Positions 17,856 to 64,000 of a stretch of DNA of 64,000 nucleotides are shown in pieces. Position numbers and translations under genes: made by a program. The notes beneath the pieces were generated by a model. The model was not told the DNA's origin, did no database searches, and worked only from the letters and a program-made list of their open reading frames with translations. Origin of the DNA: Chrysemys picta bellii (Eukaryota); contig NC_088793.1 of the NCBI RefSeq assembly GCF_011386835.1, positions 205,592,001-205,656,000 on the forward strand. Direction: 5' to 3'. Position 1 is the first letter of the stretch. Each line of letters starts with the position of its first letter.

Positions 17856-18289
17856 TAAATTTCTGCCTTAACATTGCTGAGGCTGCCTTTTAAGTTTTAT
17901 GTATGAGTTTGATGAAGTTGTACAACCCTGAAGATGCTCCTACTTAAGGGTCAGCCAGCACCACAAAGTCACAGCTCCAGCACAGTTGATAATGGGGCCT
18001 ATTGTTTGAACATGTATGACAGAATGTTTCCTTGTATTAGTGTGTGTTGCCTTGCCTTAGTGTTTGACTCTGTGTATGTGTTGTGACGGGAGCGAGAGAA
18101 TAATGTGTGCTAGAGGGACTGCATGTGTGTTTTGTCATGTGTGTGAGTGCTTGTTCCATGTGTGAGTGTGTCCTTATCTGGGTATAAGAGTTTGCTGTGT
18201 GTGTGTGTTTCCTCTCTGTTGTTCAAGGTGATTAGGTGGATCAGTGTGTAAGGGTATGTTGTCTTTCGTGTGCCCATGTCAGTATAAGC

Positions 18290-18900
18290 CTCCTTCAACC
18301 TATCTGTCTGTACCCCTCCCACAGCCTCCTCATCTATCCCTGGCTCATCTCTGCCTGTCCATCTGTTCCTTGACTCCTCTTCCCCTCAACCCACTTTTTT
18401 GTCTCTGTCCTGACCCTGACTGGGATCTCCTGTCTGACCATGGCTGCCAGTGCCCCCATCTGTCTGTCCATCCAGCCCTGGCAGACCCCAGCTGCTGGCA
18501 ATTCCCGGGTGGCCCTTGTCTGTCCGTCTGGCCCTGGCTGAGTTCCTCCCTGGGCTCTCCCCTGTCTGTCTATCCCGTGTATCTGGCTGAACTTCCCTTT
18601 CCCTGTTTGTTGTCAGTCTGTCTGTGCCTGGCCAGAATCCCCTCCCTCCAGTCGGTCTGTCCCTCCATCCCTGGCCCGGCTCCCCATTTCTGTCTGTCTG
18701 TCTGTCCCTGTCTGCAGTCCCCTCCCCTAGTCTAGCCATCCATCCCTGGCCGGGCTCCCCCTTTCTGTCTGTCTGTCTGTCCCCAGTTGCCATCCCCCTC
18801 CCCCAGTCTGTCTGTCCATCCCTGGCCGGGCTCCCCCTTTCTGTCTGTCTGTCTGTCCCGGCTGCCATCCCCCCCCCAGCCCGAGCCCGCCTGTCCCGGC
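18290..18900. repeat. Pyrimidine-rich compound tandem repeat (about 75-bp unit with (TCTG)n) upstream of TPC3
   Basis: CATCCCTGGCCGGGCTCCCC-like anchor recurs at 18666, 18741 and 18817; degenerate copies lie further upstream. Confidence 0.85.
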
Positions 18901-19150
18901 CGGGCTGCCCGCGGGCTGGGAGCTGTTTCCGCTGCCCGGAGTCACGTGCGGGCGGGGTTAAAGCTCGCGGCGGGGCTCGCCGGGGATGGAGCTAGCGGTG
19001 CTCTGAGCGGAGCCGGCCCGGTTATGTCCGCCGCAGCCCGGGACCCGCCGCTCGAGCAGGAGGTAACGGGGCTCGGCGGGCGGGTGCTGGGGCCATTCGC
19101 GGGGTGCAGGGTCCCGCCGGGACTGGGATCCGCGCATCCCCCCCGGCTGC
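18880..19150 (+). promoter_or_regulatory. TPC3 CpG-island promoter: CLEAR-like GTCACGTG (18941-18948), GC box (18950-18957), uORF 18986-19006
   Basis: Sequence GGAGTCACGTGCGGGCGGGGTTAAAG followed by gggATGGAGCTAGCGGTGCTCTGA. Confidence 0.6.
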
Positions 19151-22100
19151 TGCCTGCAAGCCTGTCCCTGGGCTGCCAGCTCCCTCCCCGGAGCCTTGAT
19201 GGGCAGGTCTGCACCCCCCCCCCCATGCACGCTGGGCTGTAGGGAGGGGCTCTTTGGCCAGAACCCCCCCTTTGCAGAACAAAGCTGGCAGCCTGCCCTT
19301 TGCCCCCTGCAAAGTGCCTGCACTAACCTCCGGGCGAGGGGCCACCTGCAGGGTGTGTCCGCTGGCCACGCTTCCCGGCCCGCTCTTGGCAAGAGGGGGA
19401 AGCCCTCTCTCTACCCTTCGACCTCCCTCTAGGGACGTCTAGGGGCGCAGGGCTAGCCATGGCCTGTCAGGCTTCGGTTTGCTGAGGGAGCGGGGCCTCG
19501 GCAGCTCCATCTGCTTTTGTAGCTTTATTCCCTGTTAAGAAATTGGACAGAGACCTCTGTGTAAGGAGGCAGTGTGGTCCAGTGGCTAGAGCATGGGATT
19601 CAGTCAGGAGACAGACCTGGATTATTTCCCTGGTTCTGCGACTAGCCCTCTAAAGAGAGGGGAAGTGACTCAGTCAGTGGGTGGGGATGCCATACTGGGG
19701 TATTTTAAAAATCAGTTGCCGATGGGATCGCAGGAAGGTGATGGAGACGACAAAGGCCCTTTCTACATGGCAAAATGTTTAGTCTTCTAACTGCATTTAC
19801 TATCTATGTTCTAAGCGACACCTGCTTACAGCACTTGTCTCCTGCACTGGATAAAGTGGGGGGTTATTTCATAGGGCATGTCTACACTGCAGGCATGGGG
19901 TGGGACTGCAGCTTGTGTAGACATACCTAAACCAGCTTTAATCTTGGTTTCAGAGTAGCAGCCATGTTAGTCTGTATCCGCAAAAAGAACAGGAGTACTT
20001 GTGGCACCTTAGAGACTAACACATTTATTAGAGCATAAGCTTTCATGGGCTACAGCCCACTTCTTCAGATGCATATCTTGTTAATCTTGTTAGTTGGATT
20101 GAAGTGAAGCCACCGTAGTTTCGGTCTCCACGTGCACTGTACAAGACTTGGGGCCCTTGGTAATTACGCAGGCAGCTAGCTTGTTCTGAAGCCTCGGATG
20201 CTGCCGCTTTTCTGCTCCAGAACCTGAGCTAGCTAATGTTCGCTTGGGTCTGTCTCCATGAGCCGCTGTTACACTCGTGATTGTGGTGTAGACATACCCC
20301 TAGTGTAGCGGGTATCTTAACCATGTTACAGAAATCTACAGAAATGGCTCTGTAGTGTAGGCAGGTTGTTTGACACGTCTACAGTCAACACAATTCAGCA
20401 CATCCATCAGCAGTGCTTTTTCTGACACAACTGTGTTAGCCTGTCTGTTTCTTCCCCTCTGTACAGTGGTGTTTGTATCCATGCATGCTGGGAAATTCTG
20501 TGTAACTATTGCCTATTGCCTCAGTTGCTGCGCAAGAAGCAGCCGATGTGTGGGTGTTCTTCACAGAGCAAAGTGTATTTTGGAATGGCCTCCTACATAG
20601 GGATGACCTGGGAGACAGAGGAATGGCTAAGCTGTCTGCACAGATGTTGATTTGGGGTCCTGAGACCCGATTCATGGCCTGAGAGTTATGTTACAGCCCT
20701 GGTCATGAGCAGAGTTGAAATACAGTCCAGAGACATGGTGAGAAACCATTTGTTCACCATACTTAGGTGTCTGTTTGTGGACATGAGCAGTGTGTTGTCA
20801 ACTATGTTACAAACTCCCTCTGGGGGGAAAAAAAACAAAAACACCAGTAGAGCAGGTGGGCTTAAAGAGCCTAGAAACGAAGAGCAGGTGTCTGGGAGCA
20901 AAGAGACGTCCTTTGGCACTGCTGCAGTTCTTCATGAGATCCACTAGATGTCAGGATCTCCCTGGCTGCTCGATTACAGACCTAAAAGTCACAATATTAC
21001 AACAACAAAAACAGACTCCAAGGAGAGACTGCTGAATTGGAATTAATTTGCAAATTGGACACCATTAAATTAGGCTTGAACAAAGACTGGGAGTGGATGG
21101 GCCATTACACAAAGTAAAACTATTTCCCCATGCTTATTTCCTCCCCCCCCCCCCCCCCCCCCCCACCCCTCCAGTTCCTCATATCTCCTTGTCAATTGCT
21201 GGAAATGGGCCATTTCCCTTACGACTCCAAGCAGGTTTGTTTTCCTCTCCTGCTGATAAAAGCTCACCTTAACTGATCACTCTCTTTATAGTGTGTATAG
21301 TAACACCCATTGTTTCATGTTCTCTGTGTGTGTATGTGTGTATCTATCTATCTATAATCTTCCTACTGTATTTTCCACTCCATGCATCCGATGAAGTGGG
21401 CTGTAGCCCACAAAAGCTTATGCCCAAATAAATTTGTTAGTCTCTAAGGTGCCACAAGTACTCCTGTTTTTTTTGTAGATGTCAACAGGTTCCTTTAAGC
21501 AGTTACTTGAGAAGAAAGACCCTCAATCACTGCATTTTAATAGTTAAGCCATTAAACACCGGTGAACACTGTGGGTCCTGTAAAGTCCTGTTAGAGTACA
21601 GACTTGCAGACACAGCCAAAACTTCCTCTCGTGCCCTCTGAACTAGCGAACCTGTGTTATTGCTCTTCCATGCCACATTAACAAGGCAGATGACTACCTG
21701 GCTCAGCTGCCAAAGTGCAAGCAGCCGAGCTGACTCTTCCTTGTTTAAAGGTGACCCAGAATGCTGCTGTGTATTGGCTAAACATACTCCGTATGGAGCT
21801 TCTCCATCCGTGTGTTAAATACTTGCACTGAAATCGTCTTTCTTTGAGACGAGCATGATAAGCGAATCAGCCCCTCTGTTCTGAGTCATTCATGCAATGA
21901 CACAATTGACAGAAACTAAAGGGGGGGCTGTATTGTAAATAGTGTGTATCTGGTACAAATGCAGTGAGATGGTAGGGTGATAATTTACATGTTTCCAGGA
22001 AAGAGAATTCAGGTGTTTGAAATCTATCCTAGGATGGCAAGAATCCTAGGTAGCTCATCCCTTTGAGAACTCCACCTCCGCTTCCCCCATCCAGAGTACT

Positions 22101-31100: not shown

Positions 31101-34100
31101 TCTGGAGGGTTGTCAGTGTGGCAGTGACTAACGTGGAAGAAGGGGCTTCAGGGACTTGATGGGCAGCACTGCAGCCCCAGTAGTGACAGCCGCATGTGAA
31201 TAGCGGGACCAGGGGAGCTAGCATCTTAAAACTTGGCCTGTTCTCTTCAGGTTCTTGAACTGTGCCCATCACCATGGTATCTGAGCACACTCTAACCAGC
31301 AAAATGGCAGGTGGGATTATTTCTTCCAACATGCACTTTGCACATAGCATTGAATTGCCAACTGTACATACCAAATGATGGGGGTCTAAATTAGCAGTTA
31401 CCACTAAGAAAGATCTTGGAGTCATTATGGACAGGTCTCTGAAAACATCTGTCAACATGCTGCAGCAGCAGTCAAAAAAGCTAACAACGTTGGGAGCCAG
31501 TAGGCTAGGGATGGATAATAAGAGGAAAAATATCATAATGCCACTGTATAAATTCATGGTACACCCATATTTTGAATACTTCCTGCAGTTCTGGTCACCC
31601 CATATTAAAAAAAAAAAAAATCTTAGAATTAGAAAAGATGCAGAGAAGGGCAACACAAATGATTAGGGGTATAGAACAGCTTCCACATGAGGAGAGGTTA
31701 AATAGACTGGGACTGTTCGGCTTAGAAAAGAGATGACTGAGGGAGGGATGTCCTAGAGGTCTATAAAATCATGAATGGTGTGGAGAAAGTGAGTAGGGAA
31801 GTGGTATTTACCCCTTCATGTAACACATGAACCAGGGGTCACCCAATAAAATATATTTAGCAGGTTTAAAAGAAACATAAGGAAGTACTTCTTCAATCAA
31901 CACAGTCAACTTGTGGAACTCACTGCCAGGGGATATTGTGAAGGCCAAAAGTATAACTGGGTTAAAAAAAGAACTAGGGCCATCAATGACTATTAGCTTA
32001 GATGGTCAGGGACAGAACCCTATGCTCTGGGTGTCCCTAAACCTCTGACTTCCAGAAGCTGGGACCGGGTGACAGGATGTATCACTTGATAATTGCCCTG
32101 TTCTGTTCATTCCCTCTGAACCTTTTGTCACTGGCCACTGTCAGAAGTCAGACTAGGCTACCTGCACCATTGGTCTGACCCAGCAAGGCCATTCTTATGA
32201 CTTAACATCTGTCTTGTGTGGTGCCATCTCCATTCCTCTCTCTCCCCAAAGGGAAATCTCCATGTTTTTGTGTAAGCTTTCATCCCTCCTACTCTGATTT
32301 AGACACAGCTCAGTTCAGCTCTGGCTCATGAAGTGGCCTACCCATGGTTCGAACGTGACTGCTTAATGTTGAACAACTTTTCCTCTGCCTGCCGGGGAAC
32401 TGTTGGGTGAGAGGCCGACTTGCTTTATAAACTTGGCGTATTTAGTGACTTAGAGGAGGCTTAGGCTTTGTCTACACTAGCACTTTTGTCAGTCAGGGAA
32501 GTGGTGGTGGGGAAATGTAATTTTCAATGACGAAAGCACTGGTTTGGACAATGCTGTGTTGGTGGGAGACGCTCTCCTGCCAACCTAGCTACTGCCGCTT
32601 GTTGGGGGTGGTTTAATTATGCCAGTGGGAGAGCTCTCTCCTACCGGCATAGAGTGGCTACACGGGAGACCTTAGAGCAGCACAGCTGCCCTGCTGTAAG
32701 ACTCATGTAGACATAGCCTTACACACTTGTCTGTGTCATGATGCAGGCTTCTGGGTAAAAGAGCTTTTCTAAGCAGTTGTACGGAGCAGTGATTTACGTG
32801 AGGATGATGGTCTTGGACTGCATCAACTGTAAAACCATGACCACCTGGTGACTGACTGGCAGAGTCTGGCAATGTTTGTTCGACTTTAGTGACTGAATTG
32901 TGCATGGGGACATCTTCAGGCGGGTGTGAGTTGAGAACCTTTGCTTGCGTCCCCTTTTTCAACAGGGTGTCTCTGCTGTACATAGATAGGGACTCCTCTT
33001 CTCTTCTGTCTCTTGGGGACGGGGGAAGAAGGCCCTGGTATCTTCCTAGGCTCTGCCTACATGAGATGCCATTCAGACTGTGTATGCTCAGTTGGCCAAC
33101 AAGCCCATGGAACCCAGAGAAGACTCCTCCATGGCAGTGCTTGTCTATACCAAGTGTGAAGTCGTGTCTAATACTGCTAGTTGAAATGTGTTGGCTCACA
33201 AGTTTCCTGTGATGCAGCATTTTCCTGGTGGAACATACCCTTACAGCAGACTGTGCTGATCTTCCTAGGATGATTGTCCCCTCCTTCCTTACACACTTCA
33301 TACACCGTACAATAGCTAACAATATTGTTAATTAAATCATTGTCACGGGACACCCGGGGCATTACCCCATTGAAACAAATGAGACTTTGGGGGGGAGGGG
33401 GGCCTCTCAAAGCTATTTTCACAGGCTGCCTGCAGACTCAGGCAGATATTGTTGCAACAGCTTACGCTTAGTTCATCTTTGGACGCTGGAAGGTTTTCTT
33501 TGCAAACATAAGGGCTAGAGACTTAACTTTGACATTCTGGGGACCAAGATGACATCCTCCAAAAACCAAGTTACCAGGCAGCCAATCTAGCTTGACCTGG
33601 CCCAGTTTGGGCCCTAGAGAAACAGGTGGTGTAACGATGCAGAGTGGAGTTTGCTGTTGGGCATAGTTAATTGGTGGCTAGATCAGTTTGTCTCACTGGA
33701 AAGAACTCCTATGTCCTGCCCTGCCTGATCATGGCAGGGCTACAAACTCCGGTATGAAAGCCACGGGGAAAGCTGACGCAGTTTGGTTTCTAAACGCTCC
33801 CTGTTGTGTCTTGGCAGATCCGGAGAGTGTTCCGCAGTATACGAAACACACTGCCAGAGATCACGTACGTCTTCCTGCTCTTCATGTTCAGCGTCCTCAT
33901 GTTCTCGCTCATGGCTCTGAAGCTGTTCGGTGACAGGTGAGAGCATTTTCCGTTCTGGAGTTCCCCGTGTGGTGGGTTTCAAGCTTTGGATCTGAGGGAA
34001 TCTGCTGGCTCCAAATCCTGCAGATGACGCAGTATGGCTGCGGTTCTAGAACTGCTGAGCAACCATGACTGGCTTTATCATCTGTGGGTATTGGGTACTC

Positions 34101-41400: not shown

Positions 41401-44400
41401 CACTGACTTGCTGGCAGACCCATTGGAGCTTGTAGGTATAAGAGCTTTATCATACTTTTGTTTTATTTAAAAAAAAAAAAAAAAAAAAGTGGGGTGGGAC
41501 TTAAATACCTGTTAACAGAAACAACCGTTAGTTCCAACAGTCAATACAAGAATCCCCTCACCCTTCTCATTAGCTGGGTTCTTCTCCCACCGTGATACTG
41601 GAACCCTACTAGTTTTCCAGTTGTCCAGAGACTTGTAGCACAGACTGGGCCTGAATTTCTAATGTAAACAAACAAGTAAAGAACATTCTAGGTCTCTTAT
41701 CCACTGTAAAGAAGCAAAAACCAAAAAAGCGTAAGCCATTCTCCCCCCTTGCAGGTCCTTTGCAAACCATATGTCCAATGTAGAAACTTTGCTTAGTCCT
41801 GGATGGCTGTTTCAGTGCATGAAGAAACACAAGGGCTGCTGTGCTAGGCAGACTGTACAAACTCGGAATAAAATACAGTCCCTGCCCCAAAGAGGTCACA
41901 GTCCAGCCATTTAGGGCCCAAACCTGCAAACGCTCCAGTACATGAATAGTTCCTCTGGCTCGGTAGGAATCCTTGTGTGCTTAACTTTAAGCACATGTTT
42001 GAGTGTTTGCAGATTAAGGCCTTGCATTGTGTCCATCACTATTAGTATCTAAATGGCTGCACTGCACTTGGATGTGCAATAGAATTATCTGTGTAATAGA
42101 ATTCTTTCCATCAACACTAGGTTTGATACCTCCATCATTATCGCTGCTCTGATCGCTACGATTCTCAACGCTTCACTTAAATCAGGTACAAACAGCATTG
42201 CGCTTTAAACCTTCTTCTGTGGCATTAGCAGACTGTTAATTTCTCAGGCACTTGTAGCTTACGTGGTAGGGTTTTTGTTTAAGATTTATCTCCTAATATC
42301 ACTCTCGACTCATGGTTTCCATTGAAACTTATGAAGAATTCTGCATGTTTTGGGGAAGTATAAAAAGATTTAAATAACAATCCATGGAAGAATGAACTCA
42401 TAATCTGTACCCTTTGAGTAGGTAACATTGTTTAGATTACAACATAGTTTGTGTTTATTCCAGCTATGTATGTAATAGCGATGAAAGGTAGCCATTTAAA
42501 TTAAATACTACCTCTTATGTTGGAGGGGGGCAGAAGCAAACTCCTTTATTTTATTTTGTGTTTTGAAATACAAACCACCCATCCCTGTCAGAATCTGAAG
42601 TATCGTGTACCGGAATTGTGTACACCTCTTTGAGGATGATAGACATAGAACATCTTGTGATGCACAACCATCTCAGGGCTCTGTCTCATTCTGCTATTGT
42701 ACTGTGACTGATGGGGGACACTTTCTGTGCTTTGCCTAGTGATTTAATTAGCCTTTGTCTTAAGCAAACAGGGAAGTATTGGAGATCATGTATACTAAAA
42801 GTTGCTGGTGCTTCTTTCTTCCTCAGCAAGTCAATACAACAGCCAGCAAGTGCTGGATATTGTCTTCATACTGAGAGTCCTCCGGCTCATCAGGATTGTG
42901 GATAGCATTCAAAGGTAAAGAATGTAATGGGGCTGTAGCCCTCTACCACTGCATTGAGCTGATCTAGAGGCTGGCAGGGGACCAGGTTTCCCAGTCAGCT
43001 GAGAAGATCAAGTTCTTGGTGACACACGTAAGCAATACTGGTGTAGCATGGCTGTATCCATGCTGCCGTATGGCTTTACAAGGGCTGCACAGCTTTACAA
43101 AGGGGCTTCGATACCAGTGTAGTTATTCCCATCTGGGAATGAGACGAAATTGTACTAGAATAAGGCACCTTTATCCTGGCATAAACTGCGTCCTTGCTAA
43201 AGGATTTTACCACTATGTTGGTGACACATCATCCCCCAACCCAACGAAGTTTGTACCAATGGAACTCAAGTGTAGACCAGGCTTAAGGGCCCCTAGCAGC
43301 CCTCTTCTCAAACAGGAATAAGCCCCACCACTCACTCAGACACCTAAGCAAGAGCCCACTAGAGCAGACAAAGCACTGCCCCTGTGAAATGGGGAAGCCA
43401 CACAAGGCCGCCCAGCAGCGGGCAGGCAGACCGTGTTAAACACGATCAAGCCTACACCCCAGCCCCATTCTGCATTAATGTGGGACAGTGGCAGAGAAAT
43501 GGCACCAACAACCAGCAGAGGCAAATGGGCCAGTGATCTCTGAGATCTGCCACCACTTTTCTCTCTCACGCCCCTGCAAAACAAAATGGTGCCTCTTTAC
43601 ACAATGGAGTCCCCCAACTATCAGGAATTCCTGAAATATCTCTTTAAATAAACATCTAGGCATGGGGCTCTCATGAATTGTCTTGTTCTAGGTTCCGGGT
43701 CATCATGAATACGCTCATAAACATTGTGCCGACGATGCTGACCTTTGGTGGGCTGGCTCTGGTAAGCACCCTGGACACGAACTCTGAAGTGCAGCAGTTC
43801 CTGCTGTAGCATGACCTTGTTTTCCTTAGAATTCCACGATTTTATCTTCAAAAGGTGAACTATAAAGCTTCAGAGCGGTCACTCTCAGGCCAGAATCAAG
43901 GCTGTATGCGTGGACCTGAATATTTTCAGGATTATTTATGCATAAAGCTGTTTCGCAGGATCTGGTTCTCCCTAGCTGCCAGTTCAGGAGATTAATTGAT
44001 CTGCTTGATGCTGCTGTGCATTTCTCCCCCTCCCTCACTCACCCCCAAAAAATTGGATGATAAATTGGAAAAACCCACCTCCATCAACTAAGGTTCCAGT
44101 TCAAAATTCTTCTCCCTCTGTGCTTAGTTTATCTTTAAACCTTGTATGGCATCACTACTTCCTGGACTAAGTCTCTGTTAATCTTCTAGTACCAGCTGTC
44201 CTCAAAAAGTGTCTTGGGGAGAAGCCACAGTTGGCTCAAGTGACCCAGTATTTAGGTACAGAATCTGGGAAGTGCATTGGGGAATTTGATGATGGAATCC
44301 TAGATGCTTCTGTACTCTGCTGGGTAAAGCTGTCATGTGACGTTCCCATCTATGGGAATGGGTCTCTTTCTCCCTAGGTGGTATACTACATGTTTGCTAT

Positions 44401-46700
44401 CATTGGCATGGAACTATTCCAGGGGAAAATCCAGTTCTTTCCCAGGAATTCCACTGCCCATCATGCCCTGGAGTGCGGAAACCCTGCCTTAAAAGATTCT
44501 ATGTTTGCTCGAGCCAAATACTGCAAGAACAACTTCAATGACATCACATCTTCATTCGTTGTTCTGATGGAGCTGACTGTTGTCAATCAATGGCATGATA
44601 TCCTTTCTGTATCTATAACACAGGGTCCAATCCAGAGTCCACAGAAGTCAATGGAAAGACACCCCCACACCATTGACTTCAATGGGATCAAAATGGAGAC
44701 AGAAATGCGATCTTAATTCCCTTCAGTAAAGTTTTTAACTAGGAAGCGTCACCCAGGGAAGCTCAAATGTGTCTTGTCTTGTCTTCATCCTGACTGTCCC
44801 AAGCAGGGTGTTCTCAGCAGGGAGACGTTCCCTTTCTGCCCTAGTCCTTAACTTTATACTTCTTGCCAATGGGTTTGCCCTGGTCACTCATCAGGCTGCC
44901 AAGCTGTACTTCATTGCCTTCCACATTGTGGTGGTGATCATGATCATAAAGTAAGTTCAGCGACGTTTCCATCTGTTGGGGGTGGGGAAGCATGGGGCTT
45001 AGAGTCACAGCCGGCTGAAGGCCTGACTTAATGTGTTCATGGGGCTCTTTCTGCCTGGAGGGCTGGAGCTCTGCTGCGTGGTTGGGCTGAAACACTTGGG
45101 CTCCGGGTTACGGTGGTTTCCCTGCAAATGCCTCCTGCTGACGGATGCATGAAGAGGTACTGAGCCGGGGGACACCTTACGGATGAAAAGGGCGATTTCT
45201 CCTCCTCAGAAGATGGAACAGCCTAGGCAGGAAGGAACGAGGGATTCTATGTCCCCCGCGGAGGAAGGATTGGGGGTGCTTTAGAGAGGGGAGGGGCAGC
45301 AAGCCCTAAACGAGTCTCATGGACAACAGCGCTTAACTCTGTAAAGTGCTGCTTGGGGCTGGAATTTTAAAGAATAAGAATTAAACTGTGTCTAGCTGCA
45401 AATCTGACTGGGACTCTGCAGGTTCCTCCATCCCTGTTCAGTGCCGGGCCATGAAGACAGGTGGGGGGGTCTTCGGCAAATAGCAAAGGCTATCTATTGC
45501 TCTGGGGGCATTTCCATGGTATCTAGGCACTGACCCATTTGTACTGATGGGCCATGAATTCCACAGTCTGCTATGGCAGAAATCCATTAATAATGCAAGG
45601 GCTTACTCTGCAAAAACATTGGGCATGTTGCTGTTTGTATAATCCTGCCTTTTCTTAGCATGTCTTTCCCCTTTCTCTCCCCCCCCCCCCCCTTCAGTAT
45701 TCTCATAGCATTTATCCTAGAAGCTTTCTTTGTGGAGTACTCCCTGGAAAAGAGTGAAGTAGAAACTGCCATTGAGAGGAAAATTCAAGAGCTGGGAGTA
45801 GGAATCCAAGAGTAAGTAAACTACAGGGGAAACGTGGTACTTTGTGGGTGGGTCTCTCAACACATCCATTACTGAAGGGAAGTGTAATCAGATTGTCCTT
45901 CGTGATGTGCAGCTGAGGGATCTAGGTTTCCAGAGTCTCCTGGGTGAGTTCAGTTCCATTTCCTTGTGGTGATCAGATGCCTTGGACAAGAAACAGGTGT
46001 CTCTTCTGCATAGGCTCTTACCTACGCTCCACTTTCTCTCACATTCCCTCCTGGGCGCACACACATAGCTCACCTGCCTTTGGCAGAGAGGGGTGTTCAG
46101 GGAGCTACTTTAGTGAAATCAATAAAACTGCTCTAGTCACTGTATTCAGAGACGGTCCGATTTCCCTCATTAGACAGGCTGAGTGGCTGCAGTGGGCATC
46201 TGCACTCTGATTGAAAGGTGTGGTGGTAGTTCCTTTAAACCCTAGCCTAGAACGTGGCTTGGGCAGGGGAGTGTGAGCTCAGGGAGCTGACTTAGCCCCT
46301 AATGGGCCAACAGCTAAAATGAGACCCTCTCTGGACAGACATCTCTGCTCATTCCCAGTCGCAGGGTGGGAGGCAGACCGGCACCTGCCTCTTGCTGTAA
46401 GAGGCCGGCATTTCACTGACCCCGTTGGAAGACTGTCAATAGCAGCAGTTGGTTGTATGTTTAGAATGGGGAAAGGTTGCTTTCTCCTTCTCCCTTCTCT
46501 CCTGACGTTGGTATGGGAGTTCTGCTCCTGCATCGTAGGGTCTGCTCCATTGATTCTGAGCCATGCTCTGCTTTGCATGCAGAGGGGCCTTTGGGGGAGG
46601 GACTGCTGGGGCTCCAAGCCCCAATAGCAAAAGCCTGGGAGAGCCAGTCCAGTCCATGAACTTGTGGAGAGCACTGGAGTGCATTTCTAAGTGGCTTCAT

Positions 46701-51069: not shown

Positions 51070-63900
<12,831 letters not shown>

Positions 63901-63914
63901 CAAGGTTCCCCTTT

Positions 63915-64000
63915 AAAAAGCAACAGAGGGTCCTGTGGCACCTTTAAGACCAACAGAAGTATTGGGAGCATAAGTTTTCGTGGGTAAGAACCTCACTTCT
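63915..64000 (-). mobile_element. Penelope pseudo-LTR end upstream of TMEM178A (truncated by the window edge)
   Basis: ctgtggcacctttaagaccaacagaagtattgggagcataagttttcgtgggtaagaacctcacttct matches the pseudo-LTR at 4411-4500. Confidence 0.8.

What the first reader, a model, noticed from the sequence alone, without database searches (positions are those of the whole stretch)
44598..44859. U12-type AT-AC intron immediately after the second selectivity filter of TPC3
Seen: the exon ends ...AAT CAA TGG CAT G, the intron begins ATATCCTTTC, has TCCTTAAC 8-15 nt from its end and ends AC; the join restores VVNQWHVLANGF. No GT donor is available at this position, and the ORF track reads into the intron ([10 protein letters not shown]..., stop at 44716). 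Known: AT-AC U12 introns are rare, often rate-limiting, and occur in voltage-gated Na/Ca channel genes. Inference: retention would truncate the channel before IIS6, making TPC3 output dependent on the minor spliceosome; the position may be homologous to pore-region minor introns in TPC1/2 or four-domain channels. GT-AG-only annotation is likely wrong here.
Basis: partly seen in the sequence, partly recalled or inferred. Interest (0 to 1): 0.8.

Follow-up and report, generated by a model that had tools for sequence, protein, structure and literature searches.

The report
Ancient U12 AT-AC intron in TPC3
The two-pore channel 3 gene in this window has a real minor-spliceosome (U12-type, AT-AC) intron just after its second pore filter; transcripts splice it exactly as predicted, it is conserved from sea anemone to vertebrates, and it is an ordinary though previously undiscussed example of a known intron class.

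Summary
Exon 44378-44597 ends ...AAT CAA TGG CAT G. The 262-nt intron 44598-44859 starts ATATCCTTTC, carries TCCTTAAC at 44845-44852 and ends AC. Exon 44860-44950 restores VVNQWH-V-LANGF.

Spliced contigs from four runs of four studies join 44597^44860 exactly (AT..AC, no ambiguity). The three neighbouring introns are GT..AG. The gene is TPC3: the best solved-structure match is zebrafish TPC3, and 17 collinear matches to it run along the window.

An intron sits at the same codon and phase in seven other animals:
- AT-AC U12-type in zebrafish, lamprey, amphioxus, oyster and Priapulus.
- GT-AG U12-type in Nematostella.
- Converted to a U2-type GT-AG intron in a bdelloid rotifer.

About half of 150 related predicted proteins are truncated models that read into the intron as "DIL" or "GIL". 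This shows that GT-AG-only gene callers fail here, whereas NCBI models are correct.

The homology idea is not supported. In this genome TPCN1 and TPCN2 have only GT-AG introns at other positions. The known Cav/Nav minor introns lie in DI-S1 and, for Cav1, mid-IIS6.

A regulatory, rate-limiting role is untested. Verdict: real, ancient and specific to the TPC3 clade, but a new member of a known kind. Interest is modest.

The parts
44378..44597 (+). TPC3 exon (220 nt) encoding IIS5 end, pore helix and filter II, ending ...VVNQWH plus the first base (G) of the next codon
   Evidence: The contig pieces cover 44377/8-44597. Pfam Ion_trans. Zebrafish TPC3 structure 6V1Q residues 555-627, E 2e-29.
44598..44859 (+). 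U12-type AT-AC intron, 262 nt, phase 1
   Evidence: The joint 44597->44860 'skips 262, AT..AC, both 0' appears in X25, X32, X8 and X40. Orthologues have an intron at the same position and phase.
44598..44606 (+). U12 5' splice site ATATCCTTT (9 of 9 to consensus)
   Evidence: the only match in the window. It is the only U12-like donor that sits at an exon end in this gene.
44714..44716 (+). In-frame TAA reached if the intron is retained, 39 codons after His
   Evidence: The ORF 44378..44716 is listed. Translation.
44845..44852 (+). U12 branch-site box TCCTTAAC. The branch A is probably 44851, 9 nt before the first exon base.
   Evidence: Orthologues have TCCTTRA boxes 9-12 nt from the 3' end.
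44858..44859 (+). 3' terminal AC
44860..44950 (+). Next TPC3 exon (91 nt) encoding (V)LANGF...IIS6 start, followed by a GT..AG intron
   Evidence: pieces 44860-44950, next joint 44950->45698 GT..AG..

Best explanation
This is a genuine U12-dependent (minor-spliceosome) intron of the AT-AC subtype in the TPC3 (TPCN3) gene.

Mechanism, from established knowledge of the class: the U11/U12 di-snRNP recognises the ATATCCTTT donor and the TCCTTAAC branch box together. U4atac/U6atac.U5 then catalyses removal. This joins G(44597) to TT(44860) and makes the Val codon that links filter II (VNQ-W-H) to the start of IIS6.

The intron is removed in the steady-state mRNA. It is the only minor intron in the gene. 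It has stayed at this exact codon position and phase in the TPC3 clade since before cnidarians and bilaterians split, with occasional subtype switching (AT-AC to or from GT-AG) and conversion to U2-type. Unspliced RNA would meet a stop 39 codons into the intron. That would give either an NMD target or a subunit lacking IIS6 and the C-terminus, so functional TPC3 needs the minor spliceosome.

Shown here: the junction, the motifs, the conservation, and the absence from paralogues. Inferred: minor-spliceosome dependence and the fate of retained transcripts.
For: - Motifs and coordinates.
- Exact AT..AC joint in spliced contigs of four runs from four studies, flanked by GT..AG joints.
- Gene identity: zebrafish TPC3 structure 6V1Q at 104 bits against TPC2 at 40 and TPC1 at 37. 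17 collinear tblastn matches to zebrafish TPC3 residues 40-773.
- Orthologous introns after NQWH plus one base: zebrafish ATATCCTTT..AC 596 nt, lamprey ATATCCTC..AC 1685 nt, amphioxus ATATCCTTT..AC 288 nt, oyster ATATCCTTT..AC 513 nt, Priapulus ATATCCTTT..AC 288 nt, Nematostella GTATCCTTT..TTTCCTTAGC..AG 675 nt.
- These invertebrate proteins score far higher against zebrafish TPC3 than against a TPC1-like protein.
- Protein-level footprint: 56 [DNH]IL plus 14 [GS]IL plus 2 GIF read-throughs among 150 cluster representatives.
- Retained-intron stop codon.
Against: - No experiment or knock-down shows minor-spliceosome dependence. The class is assigned from sequence.
- All RNA evidence is from assembled contigs. 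These show presence of the spliced form but cannot measure efficiency or retention.
- The branch-A to 3' splice-site distance (9 nt) is at the short end of the usual range.
- Orthology of the invertebrate genes to TPC3 rests on similarity scores, not a rooted tree.
Confidence: 0.93

Rival explanations
1. The intron is more than a conserved relic. It is a regulated, rate-limiting 'detained' intron whose retention tunes TPC3 protein output.
For: - U12 introns in Scn5a and Cacna1c are retained, and protein and current fall, on U6atac knock-down (PMC8767276).
- Retention here creates a premature stop.
- Run X32 holds one 167-nt contig inside the intron (44608-44774) at depth 2.4 against 12 for the mRNA contig, and none in the neighbouring introns.
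- The position has been kept for more than 600 million years.
Against: - One low-depth intronic contig in one of four runs is weak. X8 has intronic contigs in two other, U2-type, introns and none in this one.
- Contigs cannot quantify retention.
- Long conservation is typical of U12 introns generally and needs no regulatory role.
- A rotifer replaced it with a U2 intron at the same site.
Confidence: 0.2
2. It is positionally homologous to the minor introns of TPCN1/TPCN2 or of four-domain Cav/Nav channels, that is, one ancestral pore-region U12 intron.
For: - Cav/Nav genes are enriched in U12 introns (PMC6865273, PMC6259924).
- Cav1 genes do carry a U12 donor in domain II.
Against: - Same-genome TPCN1: introns at NSF^V (GTAAGA) and IIM^E (GTACGT...AG), the latter 8 nt downstream of the TPC3 site and in phase 0.
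- Same-genome TPCN2: the exon runs through [16 protein letters not shown], and both flanking introns are GT-AG.
- The Cav1 domain-II U12 donor (AAC T|GTATCCTTT) is in mid-IIS6, 32 codons after the filter Trp. Anchored on the YF of S6, it is 4 codons away from either TPC3 intron.
- The pattern EDWN plus a U12 donor has 0 hits in the genome.
- The pan-Cav/Nav U12 intron is in DI-S1 (PMC6259924).
- No TPCN gene appears in the human and mouse minor-intron tables of Olthof 2019.
Confidence: 0.04
3. It is a U2-dependent AT-AC intron, the rare class spliced by the major spliceosome, as reported for a second AT-AC intron of SCN4A/SCN5A.
For: The terminal dinucleotides AT-AC alone do not define the spliceosome used. 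A pyrimidine run (ttccctttctgccct) lies 17-31 nt upstream of the 3' end.
Against: - The donor matches the U12 consensus at 9 of 9 and the branch box at 8 of 8, 9 nt from the 3' end.
- The same donor and branch boxes are kept in six other phyla or classes. In Nematostella the termini switch to GT-AG while the U12 boxes stay. That is the known behaviour of U12, not U2, introns.
Confidence: 0.02

Closest known systems
Conserved U12 (AT-AC) intron in DI-S1 of Nav1/Nav2/Cav1-3 alpha subunits (Wu & Krainer 1999; Fux et al. 2018, PMC6259924)
   Same: Same intron class and consensus (ATATCCTTT / TTCCTTRAC). Same superfamily of voltage-gated-like cation channels. Very old and positionally frozen.
   Different: Different place: S1 of domain I there, against just after the filter of domain II here. 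It is not present at that place in TPC3, where all other TPC3 introns look GT-AG.
CACNA1C minor intron 13 and its Cav1 paralogues (PMC8767276; Olthof 2019 supplement)
   Same: A U12 intron in the pore module of domain II. Retention truncates the channel. In this genome the donor AAC T|GTATCCTTT matches the human and mouse strings ACT/ATT+GTATCCTTT.
   Different: GT-AG subtype. It lies in mid-IIS6, 32 codons after the filter Trp, so it is not at the TPC3 position.
Orthologous tpcn3 intron of zebrafish (gene of structure 6V1Q) and other animals
   Same: Identical codon position and phase, AT-AC termini, U12 boxes. Already spliced correctly in NCBI protein models.
   Different: Only length and internal sequence differ: 596 nt in zebrafish against 262 nt here.
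U2-type AT-AC introns (for example the second AT-AC intron of SCN4A; Wu & Krainer 1997, from my own knowledge)
   Same: AT-AC termini in an ion-channel gene.
   Different: Those lack the ATATCCTT donor and TCCTTAAC box, which are present here.

Membership tests
U12-type (minor) intron, AT-AC subtype | 5' splice site /ATATCCTT(T) | tested here: met
   ATATCCTTT at 44598-44606.
U12-type (minor) intron, AT-AC subtype | Branch-site box TCCTTRAY about 8-20 nt upstream of the 3' splice site | tested here: met
   TCCTTAAC at 44845-44852. The branch A is 9 nt before exon base 44860, the short end of the range.
U12-type (minor) intron, AT-AC subtype | The intron is removed exactly at AT...AC in RNA | tested here: met
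   Joint 44597->44860, ends AT..AC, no ambiguity, in four runs of four studies.
U12-type (minor) intron, AT-AC subtype | Splicing depends on U11, U12, U4atac and U6atac snRNPs | not testable with these tools
   Needs knock-down or in-vitro splicing.
U12-type (minor) intron, AT-AC subtype | Positional conservation with U12 boxes in orthologues, allowing AT-AC/GT-AG subtype switching | tested here: met
   Six orthologues keep U12 boxes at the same codon and phase. Nematostella is the GT-AG subtype. The rotifer is converted to U2.
TPC3 (TPCN3) two-pore channel gene | Two Ion_trans repeats collinear with known TPC3, and closer to TPC3 than to TPC1 or TPC2 | tested here: met
   17 collinear matches to zebrafish TPC3 residues 40-773. 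For the exon, 104 bits to TPC3 against 40 to TPC2 and 37 to TPC1. Separate TPCN1 and TPCN2 loci exist elsewhere in the genome.
Shared ancestral minor intron of TPC1/2 or Cav/Nav | A U12 intron at the same aligned codon and phase in the paralogues | tested here: not met
   TPCN1 and TPCN2 of this genome have GT-AG introns elsewhere. The Cav1 U12 donor is in mid-IIS6. The Cav/Nav common one is in DI-S1.

The most novel reading that the evidence does not exclude
The post-filter-II U12 intron is a >600-million-year-old marker of the TPC3 clade, present in cnidarians and bilaterians and absent from TPC1/TPC2. It has been kept because its slow, minor-spliceosome-dependent (and, for AT-AC, CENATAC-type factor-dependent) removal gates TPC3 channel production. 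Lineages that lost or converted it, such as bdelloid rotifers, would have rewired that control.
Probability: 0.15. Interest if true: 0.5.

Novelty: new member of a known kind. Interest (0 to 1): 0.3.

Why it matters
TPC3 is missing from human and mouse, so human- and mouse-centred minor-intron catalogues do not list any TPCN gene. I found no paper linking tpcn3 to U12 splicing.

The result adds a third, independent U12 position to the voltage-gated-like channel superfamily. It gives a clean clade marker for TPC3 orthology. NCBI names many invertebrate orthologues 'TPC1-like', yet they carry the TPC3 intron and score as TPC3.

It also explains a systematic annotation artefact: dozens of truncated '...NQWH-DIL...' protein models in public collections. 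In practice, anyone knocking down the minor spliceosome in zebrafish, chicken or Xenopus should expect TPC3 loss.

It does not change how U12 introns or two-pore channels are understood.

Tried and rejected
- The first run search on 3.3 kb returned mostly DNA-like holders. Searching with the exon alone gave runs that proved to be transcriptomes.
- Searching the own genome with the TPC3 exon did not find the paralogues. A weak hit on C9 taken as possible TPCN2 was spurious: 30 kb read, nothing channel-like. TPCN1 was found with a TPC1-like protein. TPCN2 was found with a 32-residue stretch of the TPC2 chain as printed by the solved-structure search.
- The pattern EDWN plus one base plus RTATCC, which tests for a Cav domain-II U12 intron at the TPC3 position, gave 0 hits.
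- Wu & Krainer 1999 (PMC84117) is not held, so the Cav/Nav positions come from PMC6259924, PMC8767276 and this genome.
- A loose simulation of a donor plus a branch box within 5 kb shows such pairs arise by chance in about half of shuffled windows. Motif co-occurrence alone is therefore not evidence.
- Rfam found nothing above threshold in or near the intron.
- The search of earlier findings returned nothing.
- Amphioxus isoform P0046 and Lingula P0060 had no gene on record. Amphioxus was done with P0165 instead.

Full report
**What is in the sequence.** One search shows the + strand reading ...GTC AAT CAA TGG CAT G up to base 44597. ATATCCTTTC follows from 44598. Further on comes ...CCCTAG TCCTTAAC TTTAT AC, ending at 44859, and then TT CTT GCC AATGGG TTT from 44860. 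The exon begins at 44378 after an AG and translates to [14 protein letters not shown]...[23 protein letters not shown]. Joining 44597 to 44860 gives ...[36 protein letters not shown]. Reading on without splicing gives [10 protein letters not shown]... and a TAA at 44714-44716.

**Is it more than chance.** The nonamer RTATCCTTT occurs once in the window on both strands, against 1.07 expected. TCCTTAAC occurs five times against about 2 expected. A loose simulation shows that a donor-like and a branch-like motif within 5 kb of each other arise by chance in about half of shuffled windows. So the motifs alone prove nothing. What is not chance is that the single donor match sits on the exact base where the TPC3 reading frame breaks. 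The branch box lies 9 nt before an AC that restores the frame. No other U12-like donor in the gene sits at an exon end.

**Transcript evidence.** Two run searches found public runs of the same species label. Laying four of them, from four different studies, on 42700-46000 gave long spliced contigs in each. These show that the runs are transcriptomes. All four contain the joint 44597->44860: 'skips 262, AT..AC', no shared letters at the joint, and 91 letters on the shorter side in three runs. The three neighbouring joints are all GT..AG: 42912/4->43690/2, 43760/1->44377/8 and 44950->45698. No contig uses the AG at 44843-44844. In X40 a second contig joins the same acceptor to an exon end that differs by two synonymous letters, which probably represents another allele. 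One run (X32) also holds a 167-nt contig inside the intron, at depth 2.4 against 12. This is a weak hint of some unspliced RNA. Another run has such contigs in two U2-type introns instead, so nothing can be said about preferential retention.

**Gene identity.** The exon matches Pfam Ion_trans. Its best solved-structure match is zebrafish TPC3 (6V1Q, residues 555-627, E 2e-29). Human TPC2 and mouse TPC1 follow far behind. tblastn of zebrafish TPC3 gives 17 collinear matches from about 22.6 kb to 48.7 kb of the window, covering residues 40-773. The genome has separate TPCN1 (contig C15) and TPCN2 (contig C4) loci. The gene is therefore TPC3, and by alignment with the VNN filter of TPC1/2 the intron follows the second filter (VNQ) by two residues.

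**Conservation.** A full HMMER search with the exon returned 238 proteins. Of the best 150 cluster representatives, about 55 continue correctly into IIS6 ([VI][LI]..G[FHY]...). Another 56 continue as [D/N/H]-I-L, 14 as [G/S]-I-L and 2 as G-I-F. Those tripeptides are what results from translating one exon base plus ATATCCTn or GTATCCTn. They are read-throughs of a U12 donor, left by gene callers that do not know AT-AC or U12 introns.

I then fetched genomic DNA for named orthologues. In all of them the intron follows NQWH plus one base:

| Species | Donor | Branch box and 3' end | Length | Type |
|---|---|---|---|---|
| Zebrafish | ATATCCTTT | TCTCTTAAC ... AC | 596 nt | U12 AT-AC |
| Lamprey | ATATCCTC | CTCCTTGAC ... 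AC | 1685 nt | U12 AT-AC |
| Amphioxus | ATATCCTTT | TTCCTTGAC ... AC | 288 nt | U12 AT-AC |
| Oyster | ATATCCTTT | TTCCTTGAC ... AC | 513 nt | U12 AT-AC |
| Priapulus | ATATCCTTT | TTCCTTAAT ... AC | 288 nt | U12 AT-AC |
| Nematostella | GTATCCTTT | TTTCCTTAGC ... AG | 675 nt | U12 GT-AG |
| Bdelloid rotifer Adineta vaga | GTAAGT | ... TTTTTAG | 102 nt | U2 conversion |

These invertebrate proteins, though often named 'TPC1-like' by NCBI, score two- to six-fold higher against zebrafish TPC3 than against a TPC1-like protein. The exceptions are Priapulus and Nematostella, where only part of the protein aligned to TPC3 and the margin is about 1.2- to 1.6-fold. The intron thus predates the cnidarian-bilaterian split and belongs to the TPC3 clade.

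**Test of the homology idea.**
- TPCN1 in the same genome encodes ...YYLNNFDNILNSF | (V)TLFELTVVNDWYIIM | EGVTSQTSHWSRLYF.... This is a 47-nt microexon bounded by GTAAGA...CAG and GTACGT...TAG introns. The downstream intron lies 8 nt beyond the TPC3 site and in phase 0.
- TPCN2 encodes ...NNFDDFA | [28 protein letters not shown] |..., with GTGAGT and GTAAGT donors and no intron after the filter.
- Neither human nor mouse TPCN1/2 appears in the minor-intron tables of Olthof et al. 2019, which do list CACNA1C and SCN5A.
- For four-domain channels, the universally conserved U12 intron is in DI-S1 (PMC6259924). CACNA1C also has a second minor intron, intron 13 (PMC8767276).
- I located the Cav1 domain-II exons in this genome. 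They read ILTGEDWN[SA]VMYDGIMAYGGPS...[12 protein letters not shown] and end AAC T|GTATCCTTT. This matches the human and mouse CACNA1C donor strings. That U12 intron is in mid-IIS6, 32 codons after the filter Trp. It is not at the TPC3 position, nor at the next TPC3 intron (44951), which lies four codons away when anchored on the S6 'YF'.
- A direct pattern search for EDWN followed by a U12 donor found nothing.

The TPC3 intron is therefore an independent U12 position.

**Mechanism and function.** By the standard criteria of the class, met here as listed in the membership table, the minor spliceosome removes the intron. That step is inferred, not shown. Because the retained form stops after 39 codons with at least four exon junctions downstream, it should be an NMD substrate. 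Otherwise it would encode a subunit without IIS6, which could not form a pore. Functional TPC3 therefore depends on minor splicing in the same trivial sense as every minor-intron gene. Whether the intron is rate-limiting or regulated is open. I put that at about 0.2.

**Known or new.** NCBI models already splice it correctly, so the junction is implicitly annotated. I found no paper that mentions tpcn3 together with U12, AT-AC or minor introns. Human and mouse catalogues cannot contain it, because those species lack a functional TPC3 (from my own knowledge of the gene's distribution). It is a new, well-supported member of a known kind. The mildly interesting extras are its age, its TPC3-clade specificity and the widespread 'DIL' mis-annotation footprint.

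Noticed in passing
window 44621-44703 (inside the intron; arms 44639-44654 / 44670-44685): A palindromic hairpin-forming repeat (16-nt arms, 88% complementary). It gives a sub-threshold mir-1677-like Rfam match on both strands (28 and 24 bits against a gathering score of 84). At least six other copies at 78-91% identity lie elsewhere in the genome, so it is probably a dispersed MITE-like repeat and not a specific feature of the intron.
   Followed up: partly
L027-L031 (G000 C4, several places) and at least 12 small contigs listed: A Cav1-like domain-II exon ([40 protein letters not shown], ending AAC T|GTATCCTC) is present in many near-identical copies on C4 and on unplaced contigs. An amplified segment appears to have captured a calcium-channel exon together with its U12-like donor.
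   Followed up: no
L010:1215-1261 (G000 C15:6538814-6538860): The TPCN1 paralogue of this genome encodes VVNDWY in filter II, where mouse TPC1 (6C96) has VVNNWY. This Asn-to-Asp change in the selectivity filter could be real or an assembly error.
   Followed up: no
L022 (G000 C1:254929347, + strand): A further exon encodes ...[22 protein letters not shown] followed by GTAAAT. It is a channel-like pore motif that I did not assign to a gene.
   Followed up: no
window 44586-44597 compared with run X40 contig 5 (table 7): One transcript contig joins the same acceptor (44860) to an exon end reading ATCAGTGGCACG instead of ATCAATGGCATG, two synonymous differences in 12 nt. The genome holds only one copy of the exon, so this is probably a divergent allele or population variant.
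   Followed up: no
L017:3159-3262 (Adineta vaga): The rotifer orthologue has a 102-nt U2-type GTAAGT...TTTTTAG intron at exactly the position and phase of the U12 intron. It is a clean example of U12-to-U2 conversion in situ.
   Followed up: partly
window 51070-51321 and 53147-53359, minus strand: ORF pieces of a neighbouring gene on the opposite strand. The first matches Pfam Claudin_2 / PMP-22-EMP-MP20 just under threshold (27.9 bits against 29.1).
   Followed up: partly
window 31572-31736 (+), and 18001-20000 and 62001-64000: There is an ORF fragment ending ...[24 protein letters not shown] inside a TPC3 intron. From my own knowledge it looks like the C-terminus of a CR1-type LINE reverse transcriptase, but it has no Pfam hit. 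Two GC-rich blocks (0.58 and 0.66) may be CpG islands.
   Followed up: no
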